Virus record (IMG/VR): IMGVR_UViG_3300025770_000870
Coordinates: 1-64,000 of that record
Reading direction: 5' to 3' (one strand)
DNA length: 64,000 nt
This document shows positions 8,238 through 52,419 of this stretch, in pieces. The notes beneath the pieces are model-generated. The model was given only the letters and a program-made list of their open reading frames with translations. It was not told where the DNA came from and did no database searches. Position 1 is the stretch's first letter. Each line of letters starts with the position of its first letter. The position numbers and the translations under genes were made by a program.

Positions 8238-8759
8238 ATGAAATATCTAATGAAATATTTAAAGACATACGAATCTATGGTTGATGCTCCTTCTGGGTAT
8301 AAACATAAACCTAAACTATCAAGTCTTACCAAACAAGAGATTAAAGATATCTTAGTTAATTTCTCTGATTGGGATAACTGTGATATTAAAATAGATGAAC
8401 TTCACAATAATAAATGGGGTGATTATGTTAGAAGTGGTTATGAATTTAGATTCGATATTAATATATCATCTGTTATCAGATACGGAGAAGATCTTGGCCA
8501 TACCAATCCAATAGAATTAAACAATGATTTACTTGATGATTTAGTTAGACTATATTCTATATTCAAGGAAGATAAGTGGGATTGTGATATAACACTAACA
8601 ATTAAAGGAAATAATAAGAATTATAAAGAAACAGTTTACACTGTACCAACAGCAGGATATTCGATAAGTGAAGATGGTATTTATTATCAATATGATAAGA
8701 TAGACTTGGATAAGATACCACCAATTATGAATATCGAATTACAATTAATATCATATTAA
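8238..8759 (+). CDS. MKYLK-leader family protein
   Basis: MKYLMKYLKTYES; EIKDILVNFSD motif; TAATATATA at 8224. Confidence 0.8.
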   Translation: MKYLMKYLKTYESMVDAPSGYKHKPKLSSLTKQEIKDILVNFSDWDNCDIKIDELHNNKWGDYVRSGYEFRFDINISSVIRYGEDLGHTNPIELNNDLLDDLVRLYSIFKEDKWDCDITLTIKGNNKNYKETVYTVPTAGYSISEDGIYYQYDKIDLDKIPPIMNIELQLISY

Positions 8760-8779
8760 TAAAATTAATATATAGTCTA

Positions 8780-9331
8780 ATGAAATATTTAAAGAAATTC
8801 AATGAGAGTTCTAATCTAGAACAAACCTCACTTAACTTAAAACAAACAATACAAGATATATTCTTAGACCTTACTGATGATGGGTATAAGATAAGTATTC
8901 AAACTCCAAAATCTCCGACACAGGTAGAGTCTAGTCGTGTAAATAAATTACATCCTAACTACGGAGATAAGATAACATTAATAATATCTTTAGAAAAGGT
9001 AGAATCTAATTATGAAAATATCCTTGGTAGAACTTTTAGTAATGTTCCATTTATATTTAGTGAGTGTATTGATAATTTTGATAGGGTATATGATTATGCT
9101 TCTTCTTATGGTGATGTAGTTACTAATCAAGTAGGTGCTTTATTAAACAATATTGTTGATGTCATCACCCCAATTAGCCATTCCGTTTTTTCTTATGGAC
9201 CAAATCATCCTTCACGTACAATCAAAGATAATAACTGGGGTTCATTTAAAGATAAGTTAATAAATGAATATGGTTTAGATACATTGGTTAGATTCCTTAC
9301 AATAAACCTTACTATTGTATTAGATACCTAG
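8780..9331 (+). CDS. MKYLK-leader family protein
   Basis: MKYLKKFNES; IQDIFLDLTDDGY; TAATATATA at 8766. Confidence 0.85.
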   Translation: MKYLKKFNESSNLEQTSLNLKQTIQDIFLDLTDDGYKISIQTPKSPTQVESSRVNKLHPNYGDKITLIISLEKVESNYENILGRTFSNVPFIFSECIDNFDRVYDYASSYGDVVTNQVGALLNNIVDVITPISHSVFSYGPNHPSRTIKDNNWGSFKDKLINEYGLDTLVRFLTINLTIVLDT

Positions 9332-9616
9332 ATTTTTTAATTTGAAATCTCTAATTTCTTGATTTGTTAAATCACAAGGCTTCCACGATGATTTATTTAA
9401 AAATATCACGTCCAAAAACCGTTTGCTTAGACTGGTTCTATTAATTTGTTTCTTATTACACCTTTTACATTTACGTATATCGTAAGTTTTGGTGCTTATA
9501 TTTTGATCCAATCTGTTCGAATTACCAACGATAGTGACCATACTTTTGTATACCACGGAATCTTTATAATATTCCCAGTTATGTTTTATCTTACACATCA
9601 TTTTCAACCTCATCAA
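9320..9616 (-). CDS. Hypothetical protein with C/H metal-binding residues
   Basis: CKIKH...CKRC; C-terminal IRDFKLKNLGI. Confidence 0.65.
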   Translation of the reverse strand: MMRLKMMCKIKHNWEYYKDSVVYKSMVTIVGNSNRLDQNISTKTYDIRKCKRCNKKQINRTSLSKRFLDVIFLNKSSWKPCDLTNQEIRDFKLKNLGI

Positions 9617-9917
9617 TAAACTTTAACATTCTATTTAAACAGTTATGTGGTGTGTTATCTGTGATTGATTTAGAATAAATCATAAAGTGTCTAAGTACAT
9701 AATCACCTTCACATTTATCATAAGATCTAGTACTAAATACTTCAACACCAGATTTGTACATTTCATTAATAAAATCTTCGAACCTGGTTCCATATTCTGT
9801 ATGTGTGTATGTGATAGTATCAAATTTATCTAATACAACGGCAGAATCTATCTTAAAGGTAATAACATAAGAGTTACCCTCTCTTCTAATAGTATGTATA
9901 ATCTTATCTGTTATCAT
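9591..9917 (-). CDS. Hypothetical protein
   Basis: ORF track; downstream of the ATCCGTATATTG promoter motif. Confidence 0.7.
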   Translation of the reverse strand: MITDKIIHTIRREGNSYVITFKIDSAVVLDKFDTITYTHTEYGTRFEDFINEMYKSGVEVFSTRSYDKCEGDYVLRHFMIYSKSITDNTPHNCLNRMLKFIDEVENDV

Positions 9918-10108
9918 TTAGTATAATTTACTTTCACAATATACGGATATTATATTGAAATAAAGACTTTCTGATGTTATATTATATAATATATACAAAA
10001 AAATTAAAAACAAAGGATAAAACAAACTGTTCTAGTGTAGGAATATGGTGTTGTTCTAGTCCTTTTGAAAAGTGGTAATATAAAATTGAGGTTTATATCA
10101 CTTACAAT

Positions 10109-10825
10109 CTATTGGGTGGTAAGTTTTAATTTAACCTTATATATTGATGGTTTTATTAAATCATTATTAACCTCACTCTTTAGTATTAAAACATATTCAA
10201 TAGAATATCTATCATATTCACTTATAAAAGTACCCAATCTACTATAATCACCCTTTCTCTTATAAAAGAAAGAATAATAATCTGTTGTATTATCTCTTTC
10301 TAGTAAAGTCATTTTTCTTGTACCACCACCCAATTCTCTGAATGATTGTTTAGTGTTTACTAAAATAGGTGTATTGGTTTTTTCGTTACGAATCATCTCC
10401 TTCTGTGTGATACTCCATCTAAATGATGGTAAACCCTTTGTCTTGATTAAGAATTCAGTTTGGTCAAGTGCATGTTCTGACATAAATGATTTCATATCTA
10501 TATCAGTAACCTTTCCTGTTAATACTGTTTTACCTGATGTTGGGTTAGTTAGAACACTTGACATCTTTTGTTGGTATTCAATTTCACCATCTAATACATA
10601 ATCACCAATAGATAATACTTGATCTATGATAGAGTTGATTTCATGTCTATCATCTTCATCAAAGATAGATTTAAGTACTGTCATACCAGAAGTTCTCTTC
10701 TTTGTAATACTAACCACATTATTTTTGACATCAAGTTTAAATTCATCATCATTTATACTACTAAATAATAATCTGATATCATCATCATTGGATTCGAATA
10801 GTTTATAACTGTTTAAAAACTTCAT
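10109..10825 (-). CDS. MKYLK-leader family protein
   Basis: MKFLNSYKLFES. Confidence 0.8.
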   Translation of the reverse strand: MKFLNSYKLFESNDDDIRLLFSSINDDEFKLDVKNNVVSITKKRTSGMTVLKSIFDEDDRHEINSIIDQVLSIGDYVLDGEIEYQQKMSSVLTNPTSGKTVLTGKVTDIDMKSFMSEHALDQTEFLIKTKGLPSFRWSITQKEMIRNEKTNTPILVNTKQSFRELGGGTRKMTLLERDNTTDYYSFFYKRKGDYSRLGTFISEYDRYSIEYVLILKSEVNNDLIKPSIYKVKLKLTTQ

Positions 10826-10943
10826 ATACTATATATAATAAACGTAATTCAATTTATGAATACACAAGAATTATTTAATTATGAAGTATTTAAAATTTGA
10901 GTTAAAAAGTTTAATATATATAAATAAGAAAAAAAAAGATAAT

Positions 10944-11480
10944 ATGAAACATTTAAAGAAGTATGAATCATTTCTAATATTAGAAGGTGATACTCACCAA
11001 ACAGTAAAAGAACTAAACGGTGAAAATAAATCAAAATTACTTAATGGTGTAGAGTTTTATGTTCATTCTATGAATGTATTAAAAGGTAGTGATGATACTA
11101 AATTAAGCGGATCTAAATTCAAAGTTAAGATTGTTGACGCTGGTCAATTTGATACTGGTGCTTCTGATACTATTACGTTAAAACCTAAATTAGAAGTTAG
11201 TGATATTCAATTGGGAGAAAACAACGAAGAAAATGAGCATCTACAAGGAAATTACGGAATGATTAAACAATTCAAAGATAGTAGTTTTATTATTTTTGCA
11301 AGAGATTCTAAAGGTGATGGAATTAATAATGAATTAAGATGTGATTATCCTTTGAATAGTCAATTTGTTATCGAAGCGGAAAGTAAATTAATACCGGCTC
11401 TGAATGAAGTTTTTGGAACTGAATTCAAATTCAGTCCTTTTGAGACAGATAAAAGATATGTCATCTTTAGTGCTAAATAA
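10944..11480 (+). CDS. MKYLK-leader family protein
   Basis: Preferred start MKHLKKYESFLILE, downstream of TAATATATA at 10912. Confidence 0.8.
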   Translation: MKHLKKYESFLILEGDTHQTVKELNGENKSKLLNGVEFYVHSMNVLKGSDDTKLSGSKFKVKIVDAGQFDTGASDTITLKPKLEVSDIQLGENNEENEHLQGNYGMIKQFKDSSFIIFARDSKGDGINNELRCDYPLNSQFVIEAESKLIPALNEVFGTEFKFSPFETDKRYVIFSAK

Positions 11481-11484
11481 ACAG

Positions 11485-11863: not shown

Positions 11864-12745
11864 ATGAAATACTTAAAGTTATACGAACAATTTAGTCTTT
11901 TATTAGAGAAATTAGATACCAAAGGAAAACAACTATTTTTACTGTGTGGTCCAAGTGGTACAGGTAAAACTTACTTATCTGGTAAAATAGGAATCCGCCA
12001 TTGGACTGAATCATCAGATTTCGAAGGAGATTGTTTAATTACAACCGATGTCGTGGGAATTGAACAAGAAAAAATTACACAGTTATTAGAAGCTAAAGGT
12101 TGTCCTAAGTTAGCTGAGATATCAAAAACATTTAAAGAAGATGGAATATTTACTATAAAAGTATATTATCAAGATATTTATAAAAAGTGGGAAGATGAGT
12201 CTAGTGATGAGGAAAAAGAGATATTAAATCCGTTATGGGATATTTGTACAGAATCAAATAGTAAATGTCCTAATACAAATCAACAAGATACTAGAGTTTG
12301 GAAACTAGCTTTTGTTGGTTATTTATGGGGTACTGGTAGAATTGTTTTTGATGATGTTAGACCAACAATAAATAATTTTTATGATGGTATAAAAGAATAT
12401 ATAATTTATACTCCACTTATAACATACCTTAGTGATAATTTGATTAATAGACTTAAAAAGGATCCTAATATGAGTGTAGAAGATAAAATTAAAAAGTTTT
12501 TTGAGTGGTTTCAATTATCGGAAACAGTTGATAATTCATTTCCAGATGATATAAAATATACTATTCAAGAGATTGAAGAATCTATGAAAGGGTTAAATAT
12601 TAAAATAGAAGACTTTATAAACATTTCTAAAATTACAGATGAAATGAAAAATGATGGTTTCTACTTTATAAAAGGTGGGATTCAAGGAGATAAAGATAAT
12701 AGTCCGGTATTTAATTCAAGAAGTGGTCAGAAATTAAGCTTATGA
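11864..12745 (+). CDS. P-loop NTPase/kinase with MKYLK leader
   Basis: Walker A GPSGTGKT, RIVFDD Walker B-like; leader MKYLKLYEQFSLLLE. Confidence 0.8.
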   Translation: MKYLKLYEQFSLLLEKLDTKGKQLFLLCGPSGTGKTYLSGKIGIRHWTESSDFEGDCLITTDVVGIEQEKITQLLEAKGCPKLAEISKTFKEDGIFTIKVYYQDIYKKWEDESSDEEKEILNPLWDICTESNSKCPNTNQQDTRVWKLAFVGYLWGTGRIVFDDVRPTINNFYDGIKEYIIYTPLITYLSDNLINRLKKDPNMSVEDKIKKFFEWFQLSETVDNSFPDDIKYTIQEIEESMKGLNIKIEDFINISKITDEMKNDGFYFIKGGIQGDKDNSPVFNSRSGQKLSL

Positions 12746-13359
12746 AATATCTAAAGAAATTTGAAGAATTAAAGTTAAGAGATTATACCAATACTTTTAG
12801 TGAGAATTTTGTGCGTGATGTTAGAGATATAGTACAAGACTTAGAAGAAGACTCACCTTATACAATAGAATTAGATTTAACGTTCAATGGGTTAGAAGGT
12901 CGTAAAGGTAACCATTCACGTTTGGAAGGAGAAGATAAAAGACTATGGGATAGTGACTTACCAGCTATTACTGTATTCGTTAAAGATCCTGTTGAAAGAC
13001 CTGACTTATGGCAAGATGATAAGAAACGCTTTGTTACTAAGAGATGGGTTAATACAGATGGTTCATTAAGAGGTAAGGCTAGAAAGATTAAGATGTGGAA
13101 TCAAGAATGTATTAACGTAGCTAAACGATTAAAAGAATACTTAGGTGATAACTATTTATTATTCACTATAATTGATAGGGGTGATGAAAGGTCATTTGAT
13201 TTAGATACTATTAATAAACCAAGTGATATAGGTCAACCAAGTGGTGATGGATGGTGTTCTTTCCCTAGACTTAGTGTACGTAACTATCAACAAGGAGACA
13301 TAACAAGTTTTAGAATACTATACAAACCAGATGAATATATTGAATCAGAGATAGTATAG
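12742..13359 (+). CDS. MKYLK-leader family protein
   Basis: MKYLKKFEE; DVRDIVQDLEED. Confidence 0.8.
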   Translation: MKYLKKFEELKLRDYTNTFSENFVRDVRDIVQDLEEDSPYTIELDLTFNGLEGRKGNHSRLEGEDKRLWDSDLPAITVFVKDPVERPDLWQDDKKRFVTKRWVNTDGSLRGKARKIKMWNQECINVAKRLKEYLGDNYLLFTIIDRGDERSFDLDTINKPSDIGQPSGDGWCSFPRLSVRNYQQGDITSFRILYKPDEYIESEIV

Positions 13360-19637: not shown

Positions 19638-20324
19638 TTAGTTACCAGTTAATAAATTTGCACCACCAAATTTTAAAATTTCTCGTTTATATTGATCCCA
19701 TAGATATACCATCTCTTCCTCTTTTACACCATATTTAGATCTACAATATCTAATGAAAGGTGGAACCGGATACTCATTCTTTCTTCTTGGTGAATCGGAG
19801 AGGCAAATATAATGGTAAGGTGTTAAATGCGTAAAGGGATATGTCAATGGAAGATCATAACTACCCATAAAAGGAAAAGTAATTTCTTCTTTATCATAAT
19901 CTATTACAGTATCATTTACTAAATCTGATATTACGTTCTCTCTATCATTTTGTTTAGGTACATAAAACAAAGGTACAGAATTATATGTATTTTCTGATTT
20001 CTTTACGTTATCTATCCATTTATTAAAGTCATAGTTTCTATCACTTACTGTTGGATCTGAGTTTAGAACCCATCCCTGGTCTTCTAAGAAGTCATTAAGA
20101 TGGTTTAGTTCATCTAGGAATGGTGTTAATTTAAACCCATCTGAATTTCCATTTTTTAGAATGTATATCTCAATACCTGTCATTACACCACGTTTCTCTT
20201 TAGGTTGAGTATCTACTACTATACCATCATCAGATAACGGAGATAGTATATCATCTATATAATCTCTGATAGCATCGTTAGGATGTATTGATTCGAATAG
20301 TTTATATTTCTTTATATACTTCAT
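19638..20324 (-). CDS. MKYLK-leader family protein, paralog of 20321..20743
   Basis: MKYIKKYKLFES; DILSPLSDDGIVV; VPLFY. Confidence 0.8.
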   Translation of the reverse strand: MKYIKKYKLFESIHPNDAIRDYIDDILSPLSDDGIVVDTQPKEKRGVMTGIEIYILKNGNSDGFKLTPFLDELNHLNDFLEDQGWVLNSDPTVSDRNYDFNKWIDNVKKSENTYNSVPLFYVPKQNDRENVISDLVNDTVIDYDKEEITFPFMGSYDLPLTYPFTHLTPYHYICLSDSPRRKNEYPVPPFIRYCRSKYGVKEEEMVYLWDQYKREILKFGGANLLTGN

Positions 20325-20743
20325 ATTCCGAAAAATCTCCGTCTCTTATTATCTTTAGGTGTATAAAACAAAGGTACACGTACATATTTAGGATCCGGAC
20401 TTAATGCTGATATCCATTGATTGAATGGTGTCATTATGCTCCTTATTTCCGCCCAACCAAAAACCCTCATATCCTCACTAATAACCCATCCCTCTCCTTC
20501 CATGAAGTCGTTGAGGTGCTTTAGTTCATCTTTATAAGGTGTTAATGTAAACCCCTTTGAATTTACTGGTTTATTCATGTATATCTCAATGCCATAATAT
20601 TTTTCTGTTAAGGTTTTATCAGATGAAAGTACCTCTACTACTATACCATTATCAGATAAAGGAGATAGTATATCTTGTATAGTATCTTTGATAGCAGCAT
20701 GGTTAGTATGTTCAAATACTTTATATTTCTTTATGTGTTTCAT
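20321..20743 (-). CDS. MKYLK-leader family protein
   Basis: MKHIKKYKVFEH; DILSPLSDNGIVV. Confidence 0.8.
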   Translation of the reverse strand: MKHIKKYKVFEHTNHAAIKDTIQDILSPLSDNGIVVEVLSSDKTLTEKYYGIEIYMNKPVNSKGFTLTPYKDELKHLNDFMEGEGWVISEDMRVFGWAEIRSIMTPFNQWISALSPDPKYVRVPLFYTPKDNKRRRFFGI

Positions 20744-21180
20744 AAACCATATACTATTGTTATTTGTAATATATCTAAATTAAAATCATCTGATAATAAC
20801 TTATTAGATCCATCACTCTTAAATCTTGTTAATTGTTTTGGGTCATATAACATCTCAGTTCTATTCATAGAATCCACCTCATCTATTAATACATCAGCAT
20901 AAATGTATTTAACATCTCTACCCATCTCAATGAATCTTAACACATCATCTCTTACCTCATCAAGACTAAACACTTGTAAATCTTTTAAGTATTGAGTTTT
21001 CTTAGATCCACCTTTAGGTTTATATATTTTTATGTTAGATTGTATACCTGATGTTCTTCCTTTATTACCATCCTTTATATCAATGAAGAATCCTTCATCT
21101 TCTAATGAATAAAAGAATTGACCATTATCTACTTCTTGATCCAAACTCTCGAATATATTATATTTCTTTATATACTTCAT
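20740..21180 (-). CDS. MKYLK-leader family protein, paralog of 21664..22107
   Basis: Long identical peptide blocks shared with 21664..22107. Confidence 0.85.
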   Translation of the reverse strand: MKYIKKYNIFESLDQEVDNGQFFYSLEDEGFFIDIKDGNKGRTSGIQSNIKIYKPKGGSKKTQYLKDLQVFSLDEVRDDVLRFIEMGRDVKYIYADVLIDEVDSMNRTEMLYDPKQLTRFKSDGSNKLLSDDFNLDILQITIVYGL

Positions 21181-21662
21181 TTGTTATGTTTATATATTAA
21201 CAATATTAAATAATCGATGGGTGCTCTACCGATAAATTCAAATAAATCATTGATACTCGATATGTTATCACCAAGGTCACGATGATAATACTCTTGATGA
21301 GCAATAACATCAGTCTTACTTATAGCTTCCACTACTAACTTATAACCACTCTTTGATAGATAAGAACTAAGATGTTGTACAGTATCTAATATTGTATCGT
21401 TTACTAGATAAGGTTTTGAACGCTTATAATCATTCTCATCACCAACCATCTTTTCTATATGTATCGTAATACCTTCCATTTCCTTCATACGTTTTGTATC
21501 ATTATCAACGAAAAATATTGACTCTTTCTTACCGACTAAGAAATCCTCATCTTCTATACCGGATAGTATATCACTAACATCATCAAATATATCAGATGTA
21601 GATTCGAATCTCTTATATCCTTTTAAGTGTTCAAATACCATATATTTCTTTATGTACTTCAT
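21177..21662 (-). CDS. MKYLK-leader family protein (doubled leader)
   Basis: MKYIKKYMVFE-HLKGYKRFES. Confidence 0.8.
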   Translation of the reverse strand: MKYIKKYMVFEHLKGYKRFESTSDIFDDVSDILSGIEDEDFLVGKKESIFFVDNDTKRMKEMEGITIHIEKMVGDENDYKRSKPYLVNDTILDTVQHLSSYLSKSGYKLVVEAISKTDVIAHQEYYHRDLGDNISSINDLFEFIGRAPIDYLILLIYKHNK

Positions 21663-21663
21663 A

Positions 21664-22107
21664 TTATAAACCATACACTATTGTTATCTGTAATATATCT
21701 ATATTAAAGTTATCATCTAGTAACTTATTAGATCCATCCGTCTTATATCTTGTTAATTGTTTTGGGTCATATAACATCTCAACCTCATCTATCGTATATC
21801 TGCTTCCATCTGACACATCAGCATAAATGTATTTAATGTCACGACACATCTCAATGAATCTTAATACATCATCTCTTATCTCATCAATACTAAATCTCAC
21901 CCTTGTATAGCGCTCGTATGTGGTTTTCTTAGGTCCATCTTTAGGCTTATAGATTTTTATGTTAGATTGTATACCTGATGTTCTTCCTTTATTACTATCA
22001 AATACTTCAATGAAGAATCCTTCATCTTCTAATGAATAAAAGAATTGACCATCATCTACTAATTGGTCTAAACCCTCGAATAACTTATATTTCTTTAGAT
22101 ACTTCAT
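21664..22107 (-). CDS. MKYLK-leader family protein
   Basis: MKYLKKYKLFEG. Confidence 0.85.
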   Translation of the reverse strand: MKYLKKYKLFEGLDQLVDDGQFFYSLEDEGFFIEVFDSNKGRTSGIQSNIKIYKPKDGPKKTTYERYTRVRFSIDEIRDDVLRFIEMCRDIKYIYADVSDGSRYTIDEVEMLYDPKQLTRYKTDGSNKLLDDNFNIDILQITIVYGL

Positions 22108-22113: not shown

Positions 22114-22137
22114 TATATATTAATAATATAATATATA
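22114..22137. promoter_or_regulatory. Back-to-back TAATATATA putative late promoters
   Basis: TATATATTA (22114-22122) and TAATATATA (22129-22137) between divergent leader-family operons. Confidence 0.6.
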
Positions 22138-22141
22138 AACT

Positions 22142-22870
22142 ATGAAGTATTTAAGAACCTTTGAGGGGCATGACTTACCAAAACATTTCTGGGATGATTT
22201 AGGGATAGGTGGTCGTGGATATAGTACTAAGCCAAGTAGAGAAGAACAGAAAGAGATTAAAAAAAGAAAGATGATTTATGGTGTTAATAACCTAAGTGAT
22301 TGTAAAGAGTGTGGTGCTAGAAGTATATACCCAAAGAAACATAATTGTGATGGGGAGGATGAAGGAACTGGATACTTGGGATATTCATCTGATAAGGATG
22401 CGATAGTCCTTGGGGAGGATGAAGATTTACCATTAGAGTCAATGAAGTATTTAAGAACGTTTAATGAATCTATGGCAAGAGAAGATGTTATTGATTTAAT
22501 GTATGAGATATCTGATTTAGGATATAAATGTTCTGTGGATACTAAATGGAGTGGTGATGGTGAATCAACTGATCCTGGTCAAGACCAATGGGTATCTAAT
22601 CAAAACTATATACAATTACTATTAGTTGGTAGACCAATGGGTGATGAGGGTTATGATAAAGTAAAGTATTCTGAAATACTTCCTACTATAAATAGAATCG
22701 AATCTTTCTTAAAGGCAGAAGGCTATGAAATGGATGATATAACTGTTAGTAGTATAAATGGTACAGGTTGGGATAATATAACATTAAAGGAACTTAATGA
22801 TTATGTAGAAGATGGTACACTTGATATAGGATGGTATCAACATCGCTTTTTATTCAATAAAGTTAAATAA
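22142..22870 (+). CDS. MKYLK-leader protein with a second internal leader
   Basis: MKYLRTFEG at the start; in-frame MKYLRTFNES at 22442; CKECG. Confidence 0.8.
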   Translation: MKYLRTFEGHDLPKHFWDDLGIGGRGYSTKPSREEQKEIKKRKMIYGVNNLSDCKECGARSIYPKKHNCDGEDEGTGYLGYSSDKDAIVLGEDEDLPLESMKYLRTFNESMAREDVIDLMYEISDLGYKCSVDTKWSGDGESTDPGQDQWVSNQNYIQLLLVGRPMGDEGYDKVKYSEILPTINRIESFLKAEGYEMDDITVSSINGTGWDNITLKELNDYVEDGTLDIGWYQHRFLFNKVK

Positions 22871-38318: not shown

Positions 38319-38747
38319 ATGGAATACTTAAAGACATTTGAATCTAATTATAATGATATTGATTATGTAGATTCAACTTTATATAATAAAAATGTAAATC
38401 AAACTCCTGAAGGTACAGAATTTATAAATGTGTATAGAGCAGAAGGAGATACTGTATCCAGAGAAAAACTACCTCTTTCTTCAAGAGGAAATGCTGGATC
38501 TTGGTTTACACCTTTCAAATCAGAAGCTGAAAGATATGCTGGGATGGGAAATAGAAAAATATATAAAATTGCTATTCCTAAAGCACTTTATGACAACATA
38601 CTAAAGAGTAGAGAAGGTGGGGTGTCGATGTCTAAAGGAGAAATTCAATTACCAGAAAACATAACTTCTTTAAAGACCGAAGTATCTACTCAGATAGATA
38701 TGAAATATTTAAAAACATCCGAAAATATTAATCTTCATCCTCGATAG
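38319..38747 (+). CDS. Leader-family protein, putative ADP-ribosyltransferase-like fold
   Basis: VYRAE...GSWFT...AERYA...GEI (R-S-E-like order). Confidence 0.5.
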   Translation: MEYLKTFESNYNDIDYVDSTLYNKNVNQTPEGTEFINVYRAEGDTVSREKLPLSSRGNAGSWFTPFKSEAERYAGMGNRKIYKIAIPKALYDNILKSREGGVSMSKGEIQLPENITSLKTEVSTQIDMKYLKTSENINLHPR

Positions 38748-39681
38748 GTTTTAATTTATTTGCTAACCAAGCATGATAATCAAAGTCTATGATAACTCCT
38801 TGTAATCCTAAGTATCTATCAGTGAAATATTCTAATCCTTTTTTATCATAACCTTTATTAATTTTCATTAATCTTTCTAAATCATCTTTAGTTATCTCTC
38901 TTAACTCACATGAATGTAATTCACTTAGATAATGGTGTGTTGAATTCACCATATATTCTATACGTGAAATATTCTTATTAAGAACTTGCTTTCTAATACC
39001 CTCTGTATTGATTGGTATAATAAGAAACCCTTGTTCTTCTCTACCTAGATATCCCCAAACACCTTCACCTAATTTATTCTTAAATGCTGTTTTGTCGAAA
39101 GCTGGTGTACCGCCATGTATTCGGTCCCTATATCTTCTTAGAGAATTATCTATACTATCAATAGAATCTTCTCTCCTTTTTTTATTATAAGCTTCTAAAC
39201 GAGTATCATCACCAACAACTGATGATATAATAAATCTAACAACCCAAACACCACTAGTGAGTGTAAGGTTATATTTACAATCTTCGAAGTGTTCGCTAAA
39301 AGAAGCTATAGATTCCATAATGGTTTCAACAGTATTATCATACTTTATAAAGTATAAAACTTTAGTATCTCTACCATATGATTCTTTTTTAACATGTCTG
39401 TATTCAGTATCTTCTTTATTAATACTCATTGATAATGAAAATTCTACAATAGCTTTTTTTGCATCAGTTAATTTCACATATTGATGTGGACTGTTTTGGT
39501 AACCATTCTCATCTTCAAAGTATTGTTTCTTATCATCGTTATAAATAAACCCCTCATCTGTAAGATAATAAAGTCTATCCTTTATAAAGTTATTAGAATA
39601 CTTAAATCCTTTACTAACTAATTCATCATAATCTTCATCATCAGATGATTCAAATAACTTATATGTGTTTATGTGTTTCAT
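38728..39681 (-). CDS. MKYLK-leader family protein
   Basis: MKHINTYKLFES; IKDRLYYLTDEGF. Confidence 0.8.
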   Translation of the reverse strand: MKHINTYKLFESSDDEDYDELVSKGFKYSNNFIKDRLYYLTDEGFIYNDDKKQYFEDENGYQNSPHQYVKLTDAKKAIVEFSLSMSINKEDTEYRHVKKESYGRDTKVLYFIKYDNTVETIMESIASFSEHFEDCKYNLTLTSGVWVVRFIISSVVGDDTRLEAYNKKRREDSIDSIDNSLRRYRDRIHGGTPAFDKTAFKNKLGEGVWGYLGREEQGFLIIPINTEGIRKQVLNKNISRIEYMVNSTHHYLSELHSCELREITKDDLERLMKINKGYDKKGLEYFTDRYLGLQGVIIDFDYHAWLANKLKPIEDED

Positions 39682-40696: not shown

Positions 40697-41299
40697 TTAG
40701 TATGGACCTTTCTTTATAGAACTTCCATAATATGGTTTGATATTGTATCCATATTTTGAATAATTAAAATTATTTTTAATAGTAATTATTATATTTTTTA
40801 TTTCAGCATTTTTGAGATCATACTCTTCAAGTCCTTCGGTTAAATTCTGATCCTCACCTATTTCATAACCATACAAAAGCACGTTTTTTATTTTAGACCA
40901 TTCCCAATCAACTTCTTTAGTTAATAACTTATTAAGTGAAATTGCTATAAAGGGTGAGTTATAAATAACGTGTACATACATTTCTTTATAACCATTTTCT
41001 TTTAAAAATTTCTCTGAATCTAAATAGTTATCTGTTCTATCGATGCAATCATAAACATCAGACATAATAAAGTTTTGATCGTTACCTTTGTTTATATTGA
41101 TAGTGACTTTACCAGGTACTCGGGAATCACCAAATACAGAATTCTGTACACGAACATCATAATTATCATCCTGTAATTCTACAAAGATATCTTTAATATT
41201 ATTGATAACGGTGTTTGGTATTTTATAAGGCACTCCAGCCTCAGACAGAGACATATTGCTATATTCATTTTCTTCGTTAAATTTTCTTAAATACTTCAT
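40697..41299 (-). CDS. MKYLK-leader family protein
   Basis: MKYLRKFNEE; IKDIFVELQDDNY. Confidence 0.8.
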   Translation of the reverse strand: MKYLRKFNEENEYSNMSLSEAGVPYKIPNTVINNIKDIFVELQDDNYDVRVQNSVFGDSRVPGKVTININKGNDQNFIMSDVYDCIDRTDNYLDSEKFLKENGYKEMYVHVIYNSPFIAISLNKLLTKEVDWEWSKIKNVLLYGYEIGEDQNLTEGLEEYDLKNAEIKNIIITIKNNFNYSKYGYNIKPYYGSSIKKGPY

Positions 41300-42200: not shown

Positions 42201-42908
42201 TCATACCAATTCTACTGCAATTTCAACATAAGAATATCCTGATCCATTTGGTTTCCCATTTTTTTCTTTTTGATAAGAATCAACTTCTTTTTGGTATCCA
42301 AGTTCCCCCTTTAATAAAATTAAATCAGAGTAGTTATCATGATTGTGTTCATGATAAGAATATGGATTACCAGGTATAGATGTTGAGCTATCCACTAAGT
42401 ACTTAGCCTTTAGTCTATATTCTAAACCTAAAACTTCTTTTATCCTTTCTAGTGTTGATTCTAACTCATCAATAAAATCATCAAGTTCATCTCTCTCTTC
42501 ATATAAACGATAACCACTATCATCAGCACTGAACTTACATCTTAAATCATATTTTATTAAAAATAAACTTTGAACATCAATTCTTTTACTAAGGCCTGAT
42601 GTTCTTCTATTATGATACCATTGAGTTATATCACTTTGACCATCCCAATCAGAATGTTTTATTAAGTAAAAAACAGGTTCATCATTAATTTGTATACCAT
42701 TGGTCCAATTTATTGCCTCTGCTCTGTTCATAGGGTTTACGATTTTATCAATCGCGTTAGGATTATTATATGAATCAGTTAAACTAAACATATACTCATC
42801 AACAGTTTCCTTTGTCTTATTAATAAGGTCTATACTTTTTTGCTTAACCTCTTTCATCTCTTTATCGAAGTCTTGTCTCAATGATTCATATGTCTTTAAA
42901 TATTTCAT
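42201..42908 (-). CDS. MKYLK-leader family protein
   Basis: Preferred start MKYLKTYES. Confidence 0.8.
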   Translation of the reverse strand: MKYLKTYESLRQDFDKEMKEVKQKSIDLINKTKETVDEYMFSLTDSYNNPNAIDKIVNPMNRAEAINWTNGIQINDEPVFYLIKHSDWDGQSDITQWYHNRRTSGLSKRIDVQSLFLIKYDLRCKFSADDSGYRLYEERDELDDFIDELESTLERIKEVLGLEYRLKAKYLVDSSTSIPGNPYSYHEHNHDNYSDLILLKGELGYQKEVDSYQKEKNGKPNGSGYSYVEIAVELV

Positions 42909-42909: not shown

Positions 42910-43353
42910 TTACCAGTCTCCTTTTGCCATTCCCTTATCATATTCCCTTCTACATCTATCAGAACAAAATATATCATATCTTGATTTTTTCATAAATGTA
43001 TTATTACATCCACCATTATTACAGTATTTCATACTTGGTTTAAATGATATATCATTGTATATTCTTCCTAATTCACCCATAATATGTTCTCTATACTCAC
43101 CATCCTGTAAATACATAGGAAACCATTCTTCCTCGGCGGTTGGTGGGGAATCATAATATGATTCTAATCGTTTTCTTATAGTAGTTTCCTTTGTGTTCCA
43201 TTCTTCTGCAACATCTGATATAGAAATATAATAATCTATAAATGAAAACATCTCATCAAAGTTATTAAAGATATACTCACTAGCCAATTGCTTATAGGCT
43301 TCATCTTTCCATGAATCTTTATTGAAATTTTCAAATAATTTTACATATCTCAT
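42910..43353 (-). CDS. Leader-family protein with C-terminal zinc finger
   Basis: MRYVKLFENF; CNNGGC...FCSDRC. Confidence 0.75.
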   Translation of the reverse strand: MRYVKLFENFNKDSWKDEAYKQLASEYIFNNFDEMFSFIDYYISISDVAEEWNTKETTIRKRLESYYDSPPTAEEEWFPMYLQDGEYREHIMGELGRIYNDISFKPSMKYCNNGGCNNTFMKKSRYDIFCSDRCRREYDKGMAKGDW

Positions 43354-45333: not shown

Positions 45334-46752
45334 ATGTCATTAATCAATAAATATAACGAATTTATTTTAGAAAGAAAATTAGAATTGTTATTCGAATCTA
45401 GAATACACATATCGGATGATTTATCAAATATGTTAGGATCAAAATATATGTTTAATAATGTTATCTCTAGAATAATAACAAGTGCATCAGCTCATATTGA
45501 TACTGATACTAAGGTAAATTTTATTGATGTTAGTGATACTAATGATAGACTATCGTTTATTAATGATGATAAAGGTATGGATATTTATAACGATGATGGA
45601 GATGTTTATAAATCAACTAGCAGAAATGAGGTGAAAGTTGGTAAGATAATAAGAAAGTTATTATCTTCATTAGAAAAATCTGATATTTCTAAATCATCCA
45701 AAGATGTTATTAAGTTATTAACTGATAAAGATATAGAAGATTTTGTTAACTTATATAAATCAACACATGATATACAAAAAGGTAAAATGGATAGATTCGA
45801 ATTAGTCGAAGGAGATGATGTTAAGAAGTATTACTTAGAAATGAATTACCTCAGTGAGGGTGGTATATTGGGAAGTTCTTGTATGAGATATAATTCTTGT
45901 CAAGAGTATATTGAATTTTATACAAAGAATAATGTTAAATTATTAATATTGTTTGCTGATGATAATGAAAAAATGATAATTGGTAGAGCCATTATCTGGG
46001 AGGATATTGAAATTTCTGGTATTGGGAATGGTACATTCATGGATAGAATATACACCACTAATGATAGTGATACTAGTTTATTTAAGAAATATGCTAAAGA
46101 TAATAAGTGGTGGTATAAATCAACCCAAGATTCATCTGAAGGTACTGATTTATATGGTCCTGTTGATGACTATGAAAGTGATGAATATTACGATTTAAAA
46201 TTTTATGTTAAGAAGCTATCTAAGCACTACTCCAACAAATATCCTTATATGGATACATTAAAATTCTATTATTATAGAGATGGATACATATCGAATAATG
46301 AAGATTCTTCATCTAATTTAATAGAGTTAGTATCTGTTGATGGGAGATATGAATGTGATTGTGATGGTCGAGGAGAAAGAGACTGTTATGATTGTGATGG
46401 TCGAGGAGAAATAGAATGTAGAGATTGTGATGGATATGGTAAAAATGATTGTGGTGAATGTAATGATGGTTCTTTAACTTGTGGTGAATGTGATGGAGAA
46501 TCTTATATCACTTGTCCAGAATGTGATGGTGATAATGATGATTGTGATCATTGTGGTGGTGAGAAAGTAGTATCTTGTGAAAAATGCTCAGATGGTGAAG
46601 TTAGATGTGATGATTGTGATGGAGAAGGTATAATAGAATGTAGTGAATGTGAGTCTTACGGAGAAGTTAGATGTGAAGAGTGTAGTTCTAATGGAGAAAT
46701 TGAATGTGTTGATTGTGAAGACTACCAATCATGGAACAAAGTCCGGTTCTAG
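45334..46752 (+). CDS. Phage protein with SCMRY/GRAIIW/MDRIY/YPYMDT domain plus a long CxxCxGxG array
   Basis: Motifs read from the translation; about 11 CxxC units at the C-terminus; leader-like MSLINKYNEFILE. Confidence 0.8.
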   Translation: MSLINKYNEFILERKLELLFESRIHISDDLSNMLGSKYMFNNVISRIITSASAHIDTDTKVNFIDVSDTNDRLSFINDDKGMDIYNDDGDVYKSTSRNEVKVGKIIRKLLSSLEKSDISKSSKDVIKLLTDKDIEDFVNLYKSTHDIQKGKMDRFELVEGDDVKKYYLEMNYLSEGGILGSSCMRYNSCQEYIEFYTKNNVKLLILFADDNEKMIIGRAIIWEDIEISGIGNGTFMDRIYTTNDSDTSLFKKYAKDNKWWYKSTQDSSEGTDLYGPVDDYESDEYYDLKFYVKKLSKHYSNKYPYMDTLKFYYYRDGYISNNEDSSSNLIELVSVDGRYECDCDGRGERDCYDCDGRGEIECRDCDGYGKNDCGECNDGSLTCGECDGESYITCPECDGDNDDCDHCGGEKVVSCEKCSDGEVRCDDCDGEGIIECSECESYGEVRCEECSSNGEIECVDCEDYQSWNKVRF

Positions 46753-49690: not shown

Positions 49691-50248
49691 TTAATTTTCC
49701 AAGAAATCCAAACATTTTTGATATAAGGTCTTGTTTCCTCTATTCATATATCTTAAAATATTTTCTTTTTCTTTTAGATAAACCTTTGCGAACTTTGGGT
49801 CATTTACAAGAACGTCTTTTCCGTTATCCAAAAGGTCAGCGTATTTAATTGTTTGAGCTTTAGGTGAGATTCTACCCATTCTAATGGCTTCCATTTCTTT
49901 TCTCCCAGATCTATTCATATCAGGATAACTTTCATGTGTAAAAATATCGGTAAGTTCCTTAACTAATCTAACAACAGCCATAGCAACACCTGGTTCAACA
50001 ATCACTAACATTTCGTTCAGTAATTCAGATTCAGTTGTTGGTGTATCTTCCAAAACATCATGTAGAATTGCCGCATAAACCATAGATTCATCACCTCCAT
50101 TTTCTTTTACGGTATCTGAAACTCTAAATGTGTGTGAAACATAAGGATCACCAGAATATTTTCTTTTTTGGTCACCGTGAAGCCTTGTTGCCAATTCTTT
50201 CACCTTTTCTATTATATCAAAGGACTTATGTGTTTTAACATATCTCAT
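49691..50248 (-). CDS. Stand-alone HD-domain (p)ppGpp hydrolase (Mesh1/SAH-like)
   Basis: HGDQKRKYSGDPYVSH, AAILHDVLEDT, IKYADLLDN. Confidence 0.88.
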   Translation of the reverse strand: MRYVKTHKSFDIIEKVKELATRLHGDQKRKYSGDPYVSHTFRVSDTVKENGGDESMVYAAILHDVLEDTPTTESELLNEMLVIVEPGVAMAVVRLVKELTDIFTHESYPDMNRSGRKEMEAIRMGRISPKAQTIKYADLLDNGKDVLVNDPKFAKVYLKEKENILRYMNRGNKTLYQKCLDFLEN

Positions 50249-50762: not shown

Positions 50763-50766
50763 ATAT

Positions 50767-51366
50767 TTAACAAAAAAGATTTTTATCTATTTTTTTATTT
50801 AATCTTCTCATAGCCCGTTTAATTCTTTGGTTACAAGTCCTAGGTGTTATGTCGTGTTTTTCCTCTATTTCTTTTTCGGTATACCCATAAACATATTTGT
50901 CTATAACCATCCTAACTTCTAGTGGATCTAACTCTTTATATAATAACCTAACTAATGTTATGAAAGGAACCTTATCGGTTTGATCATATGTTTTATCCTC
51001 AATGTCCCATTTACGTTGTGTTGAAATATCATCTATGCTTGTGGTGATAACCCTTTTCTTACGTCTATTTATTGATAAAATGTGGTTATTAAAACAATAT
51101 GTTAACCAAGAACCAAAAGAAGATTTCAATTTATCAAATTTCGATAAGTCCTTAGTTAAAATCCTAGTCAAAAATATCAACACTTCATCTTCCATCTCTT
51201 CCTTAGATAGATTAACTAGAGTTGTGTTTTTAATTTTGTTGTATAATATAGGTTTAAACTTATTGAATAACCTAGTGATAGATTTTTGGTCACCTTTTTT
51301 AGATTTTTCAACAAATAGATTTGTTTCATCAATAGTAAAATAAAAAAATTTATTTAAAATAATCAT
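50767..51366 (-). CDS. Sigma-70/ECF-like RNA polymerase sigma factor
   Basis: KGDQKSITRLF, FDKLKSSFGSWL (region 2), GYTEKEIEE...RIKRA (region 4 HTH). Confidence 0.75.
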   Translation of the reverse strand: MIILNKFFYFTIDETNLFVEKSKKGDQKSITRLFNKFKPILYNKIKNTTLVNLSKEEMEDEVLIFLTRILTKDLSKFDKLKSSFGSWLTYCFNNHILSINRRKKRVITTSIDDISTQRKWDIEDKTYDQTDKVPFITLVRLLYKELDPLEVRMVIDKYVYGYTEKEIEEKHDITPRTCNQRIKRAMRRLNKKIDKNLFC

Positions 51367-51371
51367 ACTAA

Positions 51372-51614
51372 TTATTTGAACATTGATTCGGGAATAATCA
51401 CTATATGTGATTGTCGTATTTTATATCTAGTATAAGTATCAGATTGATCATAGAAATTTTCTGGTTCTTCTCCAGGTAATAACGGACGCTCACTAAATTG
51501 ATTTTTGCAATATTTAACTAATGAACTATGAGAAGTAGAAACAGCTTTAACTTTTTCAAAAACTTCATCCATAACATCATCATAGGTAATTTCAACTAAT
51601 TCTAAATTTATCAT
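51372..51614 (-). CDS. Hypothetical protein
   Basis: ORF track. Confidence 0.6.
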   Translation of the reverse strand: MINLELVEITYDDVMDEVFEKVKAVSTSHSSLVKYCKNQFSERPLLPGEEPENFYDQSDTYTRYKIRQSHIVIIPESMFK

Positions 51615-51618
51615 ATTT

Positions 51619-51858
51619 TTATCTCTTTTTTATCAAAATAGTTATTCCGGCGGCCCCACAAGATAAACTATATGTATTAGATTTATTCTCGTTTATAAAA
51701 CCATAATCTTTGAACCTAAATATTATAATATCATTACCCTCAAACCAACCATGAATAGCGTTAGTAGCATAATCAATTGATGGTGATTTTATTAATCCTG
51801 ATTTCCAATTATCACGGAACTCTTCCTCAAACTCTTCTATACTAATATATATTAACAC
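51619..51858 (-). CDS. Hypothetical protein
   Basis: ORF track. Confidence 0.6.
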   Translation of the reverse strand: MLIYISIEEFEEEFRDNWKSGLIKSPSIDYATNAIHGWFEGNDIIIFRFKDYGFINENKSNTYSLSCGAAGITILIKKR

Positions 51859-51978
51859 TTAAATAACTTTTTAAATCTAAAACTTGCTTTGTCCATATTA
51901 TTAAAAATTATATAGATAAATGGATGAATGTTTAATAAAATTTTAAATAATTCATATAATTCACATAATATATACTTA

Positions 51979-52419
51979 ATGAGGTATCTAAGAACTAAAT
52001 GGAGTAAATATCTTCCCAGAAAAGTGTTTACCCCACTCGATAAACCAGAAACGTATGGGTCATTTGGGGATGTATTGTTTGTGATAAATAATAACTATAA
52101 TAATCAACATACATCTAGAAACTTACCTTACAATGGAATACACGCCTGGTGTGTGTGGGAAAAAGACTTAGATAGGTTTTGGGAGTTATCAGAATCAGAA
52201 GGCCTCAATAAGGATGATTTTTACTTCATGGAGGGGGGGGATATAATAAACATTAAAGCTCTAAGATGGGAATCCGTAGAATTCTACGTGAAAGGAAAAA
52301 ATTATGATATTCCTAAATTAGAAGACTTTGATATTGATAAACACACACTAAAATGGTTAGAAGAATCTGATAATTATGGATTAACACATCAACTATTAAT
52401 AGAAGTGGATAAAAATTAG
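51979..52419 (+). CDS. Hypothetical protein (leader-like start)
   Basis: Preferred start MRYLRTKW after TAATATATA at 51966. Confidence 0.7.
   Translation: MRYLRTKWSKYLPRKVFTPLDKPETYGSFGDVLFVINNNYNNQHTSRNLPYNGIHAWCVWEKDLDRFWELSESEGLNKDDFYFMEGGDIINIKALRWESVEFYVKGKNYDIPKLEDFDIDKHTLKWLEESDNYGLTHQLLIEVDKN

What the first reader, a model, noticed from the sequence alone, without database searches (positions are those of the whole stretch)
8238..52419. About 27 unrelated proteins share an N-terminal leader resembling a capsid-targeting sequence
Seen: MK(Y/H)(L/I)(K/R)x(F/Y)(E/N)(E/S)-type starts, often followed by an L/I/F-x-E site (e.g. MKHLKKYESFLILE, MKYLKLYEQFSLLLE, MKYIKKYKLFES), on proteins with different bodies: a P-loop NTPase, an ART-like protein, Zn-finger proteins, an HD hydrolase and many unknowns. 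Established: T4 internal proteins carry an approximately 10-aa N-terminal capsid-targeting sequence (MKTYQEFIAE-type) removed by the prohead protease after Glu. Inference: a very large head-packaged cargo set injected with the DNA, addressed by a portable tag.
Basis: partly seen in the sequence, partly recalled or inferred. Interest (0 to 1): 0.8.

Follow-up and report, generated by a model that had tools for sequence, protein, structure and literature searches.

The report
Shared N-terminal tag in a megaphage
About a sixth of the genes in this fragment of a marine giant phage start with the same short peptide, a portable add-on that most likely sends the proteins into the assembling T4-type head, though no virion data exist to prove it.

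Summary
The leader is real. In the window, 25 ORFs between 8250 and 50248 start with M-K/R-Y/H-L/I-K/R-x-F/Y followed by a Glu. Across the 242-kb record, 62 of about 351 genes do. The motif is almost never internal: 4 of 1196 internal Met positions (p about 4e-37).

Conservation is at the protein level. Synonymous codon use inside the leader equals the genome's, and relatives with higher GC keep the leader.

"Unrelated" is only half right. Thirteen of the 25 window proteins (19 of 62 overall) belong to one paralogue family. The rest share nothing detectable.

The tag is portable. About 115 of the 120 listed homologues of the ppGpp-hydrolase-like protein lack it.

The record is a fragment of a marine megaphage of at least 551 kb, related to LR745206. 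It has a T4-type portal, a gp23-like capsid protein and a gp21-like protease fused to a repeat scaffold with I-A-E sites.

Leader genes preferentially carry the TAATATATA motif that also precedes virion genes.

Capsid targeting is the best explanation (about 0.5). It remains untested, the cleavage rule fits only partly, and the cargo is acidic, unlike the T4 internal proteins.

The parts
8250..8759 (+). Leader ORF (MKYLKTYES). The reading frame opens at 8238 with a duplicated MKYL. Borderline member of paralogue family A.
   Evidence: family-A HMM E 0.014; TAATATATA-type motif 17 nt upstream
8780..9331 (+). Leader ORF (MKYLKKFNES), family A
   Evidence: motif ends 5 nt before the ATG
10109..10825 (-). 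Leader ORF (MKFLNSYKLFES), family A with a C-terminal extension
10944..11480 (+). Leader ORF (MKHLKKYESFLILE), orphan body. The upstream in-frame start at 10881 is probably not used, because the promoter-like motif lies between the two starts.
11864..12745 (+). Leader ORF (MKYLKLYEQFSLLLE) followed by a Walker-A P-loop (GPSGTGKT)
   Evidence: weak PhoH hit E 0.002
12742..13359 (+). Leader ORF (MKYLKKFEE), family A. It lies inside an operon and has no promoter-like motif of its own.
19638..22107 (-). Tandem array of five family-A leader genes: 19638-20324, 20321-20743, 20740-21180, 21177-21662 and 21664-22107. Their leaders have the form MK(Y/H)(I/L)KKYx(L/I/V)FE.
   Evidence: Contigs of related strains delete exactly one unit, from leader to leader (20738 joined to 21176). 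A 184-nt metatranscriptome contig covers 21784-21967.
22142..22870 (+). Family-A gene with two in-frame leader copies: MKYLRTFEG at 22142 and MKYLRTFNES at 22442
   Evidence: a weak strain joint links 22139 to 22476
22872..23309 (+). Leader ORF (MKYLKTFES), family A
23353..23607 (+). Leader ORF (MKNLKTFED), 84 aa, highly acidic orphan
24276..24641 (+). Leader ORF (MKHLRLFE), borderline family A
24641..25156 (+). Leader ORF (MKHLKKFNED), the family-A reference member. In the model the leader is disordered and sits outside an alpha/beta domain.
   Evidence: AlphaFold pTM 0.71, residues 1-13 pLDDT below 50; no match in the PDB; homologues found only on metagenome contigs, and all 15 fetched start with the leader
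25194..25466 (+). Leader ORF (MNHIKLFEN), orphan
25469..25948 (+). Leader ORF (MNHLKNIQD), family A
37295..38056 (-). Leader ORF (MKYLKEHIEFIKE). It combines the common prefix with a T4-CTS-like H-I-E-F-I-K-E. Orphan acidic body.
38319..38747 (+). Leader ORF (MEYLKTFES) with a probable minimal ADP-ribosyltransferase-fold body
   Evidence: Invariant Y-R, G-x-W and E columns. The named atlas neighbours are ART families. VIA hits are nearly all ART folds, but Z is at most 4.8. Foldseek finds nothing significant. Leader residues 1-12 have pLDDT below 50.
38728..39681 (-). Leader ORF (MKHINTYKLFES), 317-aa orphan
40697..41299 (-). Leader ORF (MKYLRKFNEE), family A
42201..42908 (-). Leader ORF (MKYLKTYES), orphan. 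The longest frame starts upstream at 42977.
42910..43353 (-). Leader ORF (MRYVKLFEN) with a Cys-rich C-terminus
45334..46752 (+). ORF with a second kind of leader, close to the T4 CTS (MSLINKYNEFILE). Its C-terminus holds DnaJ-like CxxCxGxG repeats.
   Evidence: its paralogue at 90395-91861 starts MKSYTEFLLE and hits BSD2_CRD
49691..50248 (-). Leader ORF (MRYVKTHKSF) fused in front of a small (p)ppGpp-hydrolase-like HD domain
   Evidence: PF13328 2e-11; phrog_990; about 115 of the 120 listed homologues lack the leader
51928..52419 (+). It has MRYLRTKW at residue 18 only. I do not accept it as a member.
   Evidence: PSSM score 10.5 against 13-27 for true members; no Glu boundary

Best explanation
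The leader is a short, portable N-terminal recognition peptide. It forms a basic-then-acidic amphipathic stretch: M-K-aromatic-aliphatic-K-x-aromatic, ending in Glu followed by Ser, Asn or Gly.

[quoted passage not shown] On this reading, proteins made late in infection dock through the leader onto the protease-scaffold core of the assembling prohead. They are enclosed by the gp23-like shell. The gp21-like serine protease then probably trims them after the leader's Glu. They remain in the head and enter the next cell with the DNA.

The cargo would be a fast-evolving set of small, mostly acidic proteins:
- one large paralogue family;
- many orphans;
- a few enzymes, namely a ppGpp-hydrolase-like protein, a NUDIX protein, a lysozyme with a hydrophobic segment, a P-loop protein and a probable ADP-ribosyltransferase.
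Such a set fits a role in host takeover or counter-defence.

Shown here:
- The leader exists, is restricted to N-termini and is conserved at the protein level.
- It lies outside the folds and is portable.
- The phage has T4-type head genes.
- Leader genes share a promoter-like motif with virion genes.

Inferred only: docking to the core, cleavage, presence in virions and injection.
For: (1) The tag is real and selected as protein.

(2) It is an add-on.
- It is disordered and outside the domain in two models.
- It is absent from about 115 of the 120 listed homologues of the HD enzyme. A few other homologues carry independent leader-like extensions such as MVRLLKFESFLNES.
- The ART-like domain occurs both with and without it.

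(3) The T4-type head machinery is present.
- Portal, gp23-like capsid protein and protease are all found.
- The protease residues His72 and Ser127 align with T4 gp21 His85 and Ser140.
- The protease is fused to about 13 tandem 14-residue repeats, Y-S-E-Y-I-A-E-N-L-D-K-N-I-A. Each repeat holds an I-A-E site of the T4 gp21 type. Each also resembles the T4 leader Y-Q-E-F-I-A-E, which was read from T4 ipII and ipIII.
- The capsid protein keeps [I/M/L]-x-E-N in its propeptide down to 36% identity.

(4) A second set of N-termini in the same genome is close to the T4 leader: 16 observed against 2.8 expected. Examples are MKSYTEFLLE and KKYTEFVNE. Orthologue series run continuously between the two kinds, for example MKNIKNYKKFLE to MKIKRYDRYIAEE. 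They always keep a Glu-Ser or Glu-Gly boundary even though leader length varies by 0-5 residues.

(5) Co-regulation with virion genes.
- The (T)TAATATATA motif precedes the portal, protease-scaffold, large terminase and a virion protein gene.
- It precedes 41 of 62 leader genes but only 94 of 289 others.
- It is missing before the DNA polymerase, DnaB and thymidylate synthase genes. Isolated leader genes among those replication genes have their own copy.
- A gp55-like late sigma factor candidate exists (phrog_234, 2e-7).

(6) Leader genes sit in a fast-changing region with whole-gene gain and loss. By the T4 literature, the T-even internal proteins are likewise a highly diverse set that share only the CTS (PMC3012670).

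(7) Giant phages with more than 50 head proteins, including a head paralogue family of 20 members, are documented (PMC5694885).
Against: - There are no virion, proteome or cleavage data for this phage or any relative, and none is cultured.
- The common leader is not a sequence homologue of MKTYQEFIAE.
- At the first Glu, P3 is L, I or V in only 23 of 62 leaders, Phe in 12 and Thr, Lys or Arg in 22. The T4-type cleavage rule therefore fits only partly.
- [LIV]-x-E within 15 residues occurs in 44% of leader proteins against 24% of controls, a modest enrichment.
- Bodies are acidic (median pI 4.8; 82% below pI 6), whereas the T4 internal proteins are basic DNA binders (from memory).
- The set is very large, 18% of genes, and includes metabolic-looking enzymes.
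- Relatives with the same scaffold repeats (LR756501) have almost no strict leaders. Scaffold and leader therefore do not strictly co-occur.
- The timing of the TAATATATA class is inferred from gene content, not measured.
Confidence: 0.5

Rival explanations
1. The leader is a docking or recognition tag for some other machinery than the prohead. Candidates are a phage chaperone, an N-terminal degradation signal read by a host or phage AAA+ protease (timed turnover), or an address for an unknown intracellular assembly.
For: The tag is protein-level, portable and disordered, and all of that fits any recognition peptide. The start Met-basic-hydrophobic-hydrophobic resembles one class of ClpX N-terminal signals (from memory; not tested). 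The acidic cargo and the metabolic enzymes are not typical head proteins. LR756501 keeps the scaffold repeats with almost no strict leaders.
Against: No candidate receptor was identified. The link to the virion-gene promoter class, the T4-like variants of the leader and the conserved Glu boundary are all more specific to head assembly.
Confidence: 0.2
2. The leader is not a portable tag. It is the best-conserved remnant of one ancient, explosively duplicated gene family whose bodies have diverged beyond recognition.
For: 19 of 62 proteins (13 of 25 in the window) are demonstrably one family, and 4 more are borderline. The genes lie in tandem arrays with unit-wise gain and loss. Most of the others are orphans that cannot be placed.
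Against: Bodies with independent ancestry carry the leader: an HD domain whose homologues lack it, NUDIX, a phage lysozyme, an ART-like domain that also sits inside giant proteins, and a pterin dehydratase fusion. The leader lies outside the fold. Even if the set descended from one family, its strict conservation would still need a function.
Confidence: 0.12
3. The leader is an N-terminal amphipathic helix that binds the cell membrane, like the membrane-targeting helices of MinD or FtsA, and gathers these proteins at the inner membrane.
For: Lys and aromatic or aliphatic residues alternate at positions 3, 4, 7 and 10, giving one hydrophobic face. One member also has a hydrophobic segment and a lysozyme domain.
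Against: The peptide is very short, has only 3-4 hydrophobic residues, and is followed at once by Glu and an acidic stretch (acidic fraction 0.21 in residues 9-30). AlphaFold does not predict a helix with any confidence.
Confidence: 0.07
4. The motif reflects needs of gene expression, such as translation initiation on leaderless or very short 5' UTR mRNAs or early elongation, rather than any function of the mature protein.
For: 25 of the 41 leader genes with the promoter-like motif have it ending only 4-6 nt before the ATG. Those mRNAs would be leaderless or nearly so.
Against: Synonymous codon choice is unconstrained. 29 other genes with the motif 3-5 nt from the ATG start with unrelated peptides. 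Leader genes inside operons that lack the motif keep the leader. The leader persists in relatives with higher GC.
Confidence: 0.05

Closest known systems
Capsid targeting sequence (CTS) of the phage T4 internal proteins IPI-III and Alt (Mullaney and Black 1996, as cited in PMC5694885 and PMC3012670)
   Same: Both are peptides of about 10 residues at the extreme N-terminus. Both are shared by otherwise diverse proteins in a phage with a gp20 portal, a gp21 protease, a scaffold core and a gp23 shell, and both end at a Glu. A subset of N-termini here, and the scaffold repeat itself, match the T4 string Y-Q-E-F-I-A-E closely. The genes lie in fast-changing regions. One tagged protein is probably an ADP-ribosyltransferase, as T4 Alt is.
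   Different: The common consensus MKYLKxFES is a different sequence. The L/I-x-E rule is met in only about a third to a half of leaders. The number of tagged genes is far larger: 62 in 242 kb and probably about 100 in the whole genome, against a handful in T4. The cargo is acidic rather than basic. Nothing has been tested experimentally.
Propeptides and head paralogue families of giant phages phiKZ and SPN3US (PMC5694885, PMC10052503)
   Same: Both are giant phages with a T4-related prohead protease, more than 50 head proteins, large paralogue families in the head (20 members in SPN3US) and N-terminal propeptides proposed to act like a CTS.
   Different: There most propeptides are over 100 residues long, are not one shared sequence, and are cut at A/S/G-x-E. 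Here the leader is a uniform peptide of 9-12 residues. The phage also belongs to a different clade (Mahaphage and marine megaphage relatives) and has a protease-scaffold fusion.
Prohead scaffold-protease fusion of Tenacibaculum phage PTm1 (annotated in NC_049340)
   Same: Both have one gene upstream of the capsid gene that encodes the protease plus a scaffold.
   Different: PTm1 and pT24 contain no copy of the leader pattern, and their scaffold repeats differ.

Membership tests
T4-type capsid targeting sequence | Short peptide (10-20 aa) at the extreme N-terminus | tested here: met
   The leader occupies residues 1 to 8-12. 62 N-terminal matches against 4 at 1196 internal Met positions.
T4-type capsid targeting sequence | Shared by proteins with different bodies, and portable | tested here: met
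   At least 40 bodies show no detectable relation to each other. HD-enzyme homologues lack the leader. The leader is outside the fold in two models. Caveat: 19 of the 62 are one family.
T4-type capsid targeting sequence | The phage builds its head on a gp22-like core with a gp21-type protease and a gp23-type shell | tested here: met
   PF07230, PF07068 and phrog_207 hits. The catalytic His and Ser align with those of T4 gp21. A scaffold-like repeat domain is fused to the protease.
T4-type capsid targeting sequence | The leader ends in the protease site L/I-x-E and is removed | tested here: inconclusive
   A Glu-Ser/Asn/Gly boundary is conserved, including across orthologues whose leaders differ in length. 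P3 is L, I or V in 23 of 62 and Phe in 12. The phage's own likely sites are I-A-E-N (scaffold) and I-N-E-N (capsid propeptide). Cleavage itself cannot be tested here.
T4-type capsid targeting sequence | Sequence similarity to MKTYQEFIAE | tested here: inconclusive
   The common form is not similar. A second form is similar: 16 N-termini against 2.8 expected. Orthologue series connect the two forms.
T4-type capsid targeting sequence | Tagged proteins are made when proheads assemble (late) | tested here: inconclusive
   A promoter-like motif is shared with virion genes and is absent from replication genes. A gp55-like protein is present. There is no expression time course. One 184-nt RNA contig says nothing about timing.
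T4-type capsid targeting sequence | Tagged proteins are present in virions and are injected | not testable with these tools
   No cultured relative carries the leader (PTm1, pT24 and T4 have none). No proteome exists.
Sec, Tat or lipoprotein signal peptide | Hydrophobic core of 10 or more residues after a basic N-region | tested here: not met
   Leaders have 3-4 hydrophobic residues followed by Glu and an acidic stretch. True signal peptides in the same genome look different, and the four that the loose regex had picked up were removed from the leader set.
phiKZ/SPN3US-type head propeptide | Long propeptide (often over 100 aa) cut at A/S/G-x-E | tested here: not met
   The leader is 9-12 aa. 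At the first Glu, P3 is Thr, Phe, Leu, Ile, Lys, Val or Arg in 57 of 62, and never Ser or Gly.

The most novel reading that the evidence does not exclude
A marine megaphage of at least 551 kb addresses on the order of 100 different proteins, 15-20% of its genes, into its capsid. It would do this with a new class of N-terminal capsid-targeting peptide. Each virion would then deliver a large, rapidly diversifying, pre-made protein arsenal together with the DNA. That arsenal would include paralogue families, a ppGpp hydrolase, a NUDIX enzyme, a lysozyme and a probable ADP-ribosyltransferase. The peptide would also be a ready-made handle for loading foreign proteins into such capsids.
Probability: 0.35. 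Interest if true: 0.85.

Novelty: new variant of a known kind. Interest (0 to 1): 0.7.

Why it matters
Megaphages of this clade are abundant in sea water and lakes, yet none is cultured, and most of their genes are orphans.

A single peptide that marks about a sixth of the genes sorts those orphans into one functional class. It also gives a concrete, testable handle:
- a search term for metaproteomes (semi-specific N-termini after the leader's Glu);
- a fusion tag for heterologous procapsid and protease assays.

If the capsid-cargo reading holds, it would be by far the largest tagged cargo set known for any phage. It would mean that very large capsids are used to carry a starter proteome, not only a long genome. 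It would also link the T4 leader, the scaffold repeat and the capsid propeptide as variants of one docking motif.

If the reading fails, a protein-level tag of this scale still needs another explanation.

Tried and rejected
- Nucleotide bias or a translation signal is rejected.
- A conserved DNA cassette of promoter plus leader acting as a recombination module is rejected as the cause of the motif. There is no conservation upstream of the ATG apart from the separate TAATATATA motif at variable distance, and wobble positions are free. Strain contigs do, however, show unit deletions from leader to leader.
- A signal peptide is rejected.
- Function of family A: Pfam and PHROGs find nothing. Foldseek against the PDB finds no match with E below 0.05. 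tblastn against GenBank phages finds nothing.
- phmmer of the capsid protein and the protease against PDB sequences found nothing useful.
- Synteny of the window with LR745206 is largely absent. Only 11 of the 40 leader proteins encoded in the first 100 kb find a match in that phage's first 100 kb, and three of those come from the window.
- RNA evidence is uninformative. One metatranscriptome holds a 184-nt contig, and no transcript ends could be read.
- The ART assignment is not settled. Foldseek is not significant and VIA gives Z of at most 4.8.
- Thymidylate synthase (231623) matched the second-form regex by chance and was dropped.
- Literature searches found no description of this leader.

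Full report
**What the sequence is**

The window is the first 64 kb of a 241,918-bp IMG/VR virus record with 30% GC. That record is only a fragment.
- A 483-kb contig of the same species overlaps it from position 62.4 kb onward.
- Its proteins occur on a 551-kb contig.

The capsid protein is 78% identical to that of the 635-kb uncultured phage LR745206. It is 73% identical to LR756502, 52-53% to the 636- and 735-kb phages, 30% to the Lak phages and 28% to Tenacibaculum phage PTm1. These are the 'Mahaphage' megaphages, which are predicted to infect Bacteroidetes (PMC7162821). A marine member, Mar_Mega_1, has been described. The window's own DNA is found in many seawater metagenomes from 2012 to 2020.

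**The observation**

A six-frame scan shows the leader at the start of 25 ORFs between 8250 and 50248. It shows 62 leader ORFs among about 351 heuristically called genes in the whole record. Four signal peptides caught by the loose pattern were removed.

The consensus is M, K/R, Y/H, L/I, K/R, T/K, F/Y. The first Glu then falls at position 8, 9 or 11, is usually followed by Ser, Asn or Gly, and a second aromatic residue often sits at position 10.

The pattern is almost confined to N-termini: 62 of 351 starts against 4 of 1196 internal Met positions, p about 4e-37.

- Conservation starts at the ATG.
- The aliphatic position uses seven different codons.
- Synonymous codon frequencies inside the leaders are the same as in the rest of the genome.
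- Relatives with 42-48% GC have the same peptide.

**How unrelated the bodies are**

With the first 12 residues removed, BLAST sees only five small clusters. An iterated profile, however, gathers 19 proteins, 13 of them in the window, into one family of about 130 residues. Four more are borderline.
- Every one of the 15 homologues of this family that I fetched from public metagenomes also begins with the leader.
- Some are tandem duplications of the domain or fusions to a pterin dehydratase.
- The family has no Pfam, PHROG or PDB relative.

The remaining 40 or so leader proteins share nothing detectable. They include:
- a ppGpp-hydrolase-like HD protein;
- a Walker-A protein;
- a NUDIX protein and a lysozyme with a hydrophobic segment;
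- a small protein whose conserved Y-R, G-x-W and E positions, atlas neighbours and structural neighbours all point, weakly but coherently, to the ADP-ribosyltransferase fold.

**The leader is an add-on**

- In both AlphaFold models the first 12-13 residues are of low confidence and outside the domain.
- About 115 of the 120 listed homologues of the HD enzyme start directly at the first helix. The window's copy has eight extra residues in front. A few other homologues have their own leader-like extensions.
- The ART-like domain exists with a leader, without one, and embedded at 67-78% identity in proteins of 898 to 3059 residues.

**Head machinery**

The record encodes a T4-type portal, a gp23-like capsid protein and, between them, a 713-residue protein.
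- The N-terminal domain of this protein aligns with T4 gp21. Its His72 and Ser127 align opposite gp21 His85 and Ser140. That these two are the catalytic residues is from memory.
- Next come about 13 tandem copies of a 14-residue unit, Y-S-E-Y-I-A-E-N-L-D-K-N-I-A, then an acidic stretch and a C-terminal domain.
- PTm1 has the same kind of gene, annotated as scaffold plus protease.
- The repeats are conserved in LR745206, LR756504 and LR756501.

Each repeat contains I-A-E, the T4 gp21 site type. Each repeat is also strikingly like the T4 leader M-K-T-Y-Q-E-F-I-A-E, which I read from T4 ipII and ipIII. T4 gp22, Inh, Alt and gp67 also start with a hydrophobic-x-E string.

The capsid protein's N-terminal region keeps W-M-S-E-Y-A-E-F-H-S-I-N-E-N. 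The [I/M/L]-x-E-N motif survives down to 36% identity. The protease of this clade therefore probably cuts after Glu in hydrophobic-x-E, before Asn or Ser. This is an inference.

**Link between the leader and that machinery**

- A second kind of N-terminus, aromatic-x-E/Q-aromatic-I/L/V-x-E, occurs 16 times within the first 26 residues against 2.8 expected. One of the 16 is a chance match inside thymidylate synthase.
- Orthologues of two leader genes next to the capsid gene, followed through some 30 relatives, change leader residues freely and vary in length by up to five residues. They keep the pattern and the terminal Glu-Ser or Glu-Gly, and they pass from the common form to forms ending Y-I-A-E-E.
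- At the first Glu of the common form, P3 is L, I or V in 23, Phe in 12 and Thr, Lys or Arg in 22 of 62. Cleavage by the same rule is therefore plausible for some leaders and uncertain for the others.

**Regulation**

The most enriched upstream word is ATATATA, within (T)TAATATATA. It occurs in 137 of 351 upstream regions against 17 expected.
- It lies 19-27 nt before the portal, protease-scaffold, large terminase and a virion protein gene.
- It ends 4-6 nt before the ATG of many leader genes, which would give leaderless or nearly leaderless mRNAs.
- It precedes 41 of 62 leader genes against 94 of 289 others.
- It is absent before the DNA polymerase pieces, DnaB and thymidylate synthase. The two leader genes scattered among those replication genes each have their own copy.
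- A gp55-like late sigma candidate is present.

This suggests, but does not prove, co-expression with virion genes.

**Distribution and turnover**

A strict DNA pattern for the leader gave the following counts.

| Record | Size | Matches |
|---|---|---|
| Own record | 242 kb | 39 |
| Same-species contig | 483 kb | 45 |
| LR745206 | 635 kb | 71 (reversed-pattern control 0) |
| LR756504 | 636 kb | 34 |
| LR756500 | 462 kb | 15, largely of a variant |
| LR756501 | 735 kb | 1 |
| Lak-B5 | 544 kb | 1 |
| PTm1 | 225 kb | 0 |
| pT24 | 235 kb | 0 |
| T4 | 169 kb | 1 |

- The strict pattern catches 39 sites where 62 leader ORFs are recognised. The complete genome therefore probably has about 100 such genes.
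- The window's leader region has little synteny with LR745206.
- Contigs of related strains delete single paralogue units from leader to leader.

**Weighing**

Everything tested fits a portable recognition peptide tied to head assembly, and the closest working model is the T4 capsid targeting sequence.

Against it:
- no virion or cleavage data exist;
- the common leader is not homologous in sequence to the T4 one;
- the cleavage rule fits only partly;
- the proteins are acidic, with median pI 4.8;
- the set is very large;
- LR756501 has the scaffold repeats but hardly any strict leaders.

I put capsid targeting at about 0.5. The rest is divided among another recognition function, a single diverged superfamily, membrane binding and expression effects.

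The held literature on megaphages and on T4 and giant-phage head assembly does not describe this leader.

Noticed in passing
window 200-6150, minus strand: About 20 small ORFs (40-120 aa) are each directly preceded by the conserved string TTAAACCAAAACAAAG abutting the ATG. None has the leader. This looks like a separate gene class with its own translation-start or regulatory element.
   Followed up: partly
genome-wide, e.g. window 8765-8779, 22128-22141, 23339-23352: The (T)TAATATATA motif ends only 4-6 nt before the ATG of about 50 genes. That implies leaderless or nearly leaderless mRNAs. The same motif lies 19-27 nt before the portal, protease and terminase genes.
   Followed up: partly
whole record (G000) versus L067/G001: The 242-kb record, rated 89% complete, is a fragment. 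A 483-kb contig of the same species overlaps it from 62.4 kb onward, and its proteins lie on a 551-kb contig. The phage is a marine megaphage related to LR745206.
   Followed up: yes
G000 198213-200354 (L010:14213-16354): A gp21-like protease is fused to about 13 tandem 14-residue repeats (Y-S-E-Y-I-A-E-N-L-D-K-N-I-A), an acidic stretch and a C-terminal domain. The repeat resembles the T4 capsid targeting sequence.
   Followed up: partly
G000 202245-204027 (L010:18245-18634, L013:6672-8027): Directly after the capsid gene lie an NFACT-R RNA-binding-domain protein, which carries a canonical leader in relatives, and an M20/M28/M42-like aminopeptidase.
   Followed up: partly
window 20738-21176, 21070-21997, 22139-22476: Contigs from related strains skip whole paralogue units. 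Two of the three joints have their breakpoints at the leader-coding 5' ends, which suggests unequal recombination between leaders.
   Followed up: no
G002 (record of L037), 61-68 kb and 183-192 kb: A relative with 74% capsid-protein identity carries two tandem arrays, together about 30 genes at roughly 700-bp spacing, all starting MKHIKPY.
   Followed up: no
G000 138448-139773 (-) and 234401-235939 (+): Family B DNA polymerase matches are split between two loci about 95 kb apart. The tool reports an in-frame TGA inside one of the matches.
   Followed up: no
window 38319-38747: The ART-like domain of this 142-aa protein recurs at 67-78% identity inside metagenomic proteins of 898-3059 aa.
   Followed up: partly
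window 13364-13696, 16198-17721, 23895-24107, 32707-32997, 41334-42173, 44345-45085, 52425-53734: Several ORFs start with Bacteroidota-style signal peptides or lipoprotein signals. This fits the host phylum predicted for this clade.
   Followed up: no
window 2171-2365 and 3378-3587, minus strand: Two small ORFs share an identical 16-residue N-terminus (MIDKIEELLDMGDTIT) and then diverge.
   Followed up: no
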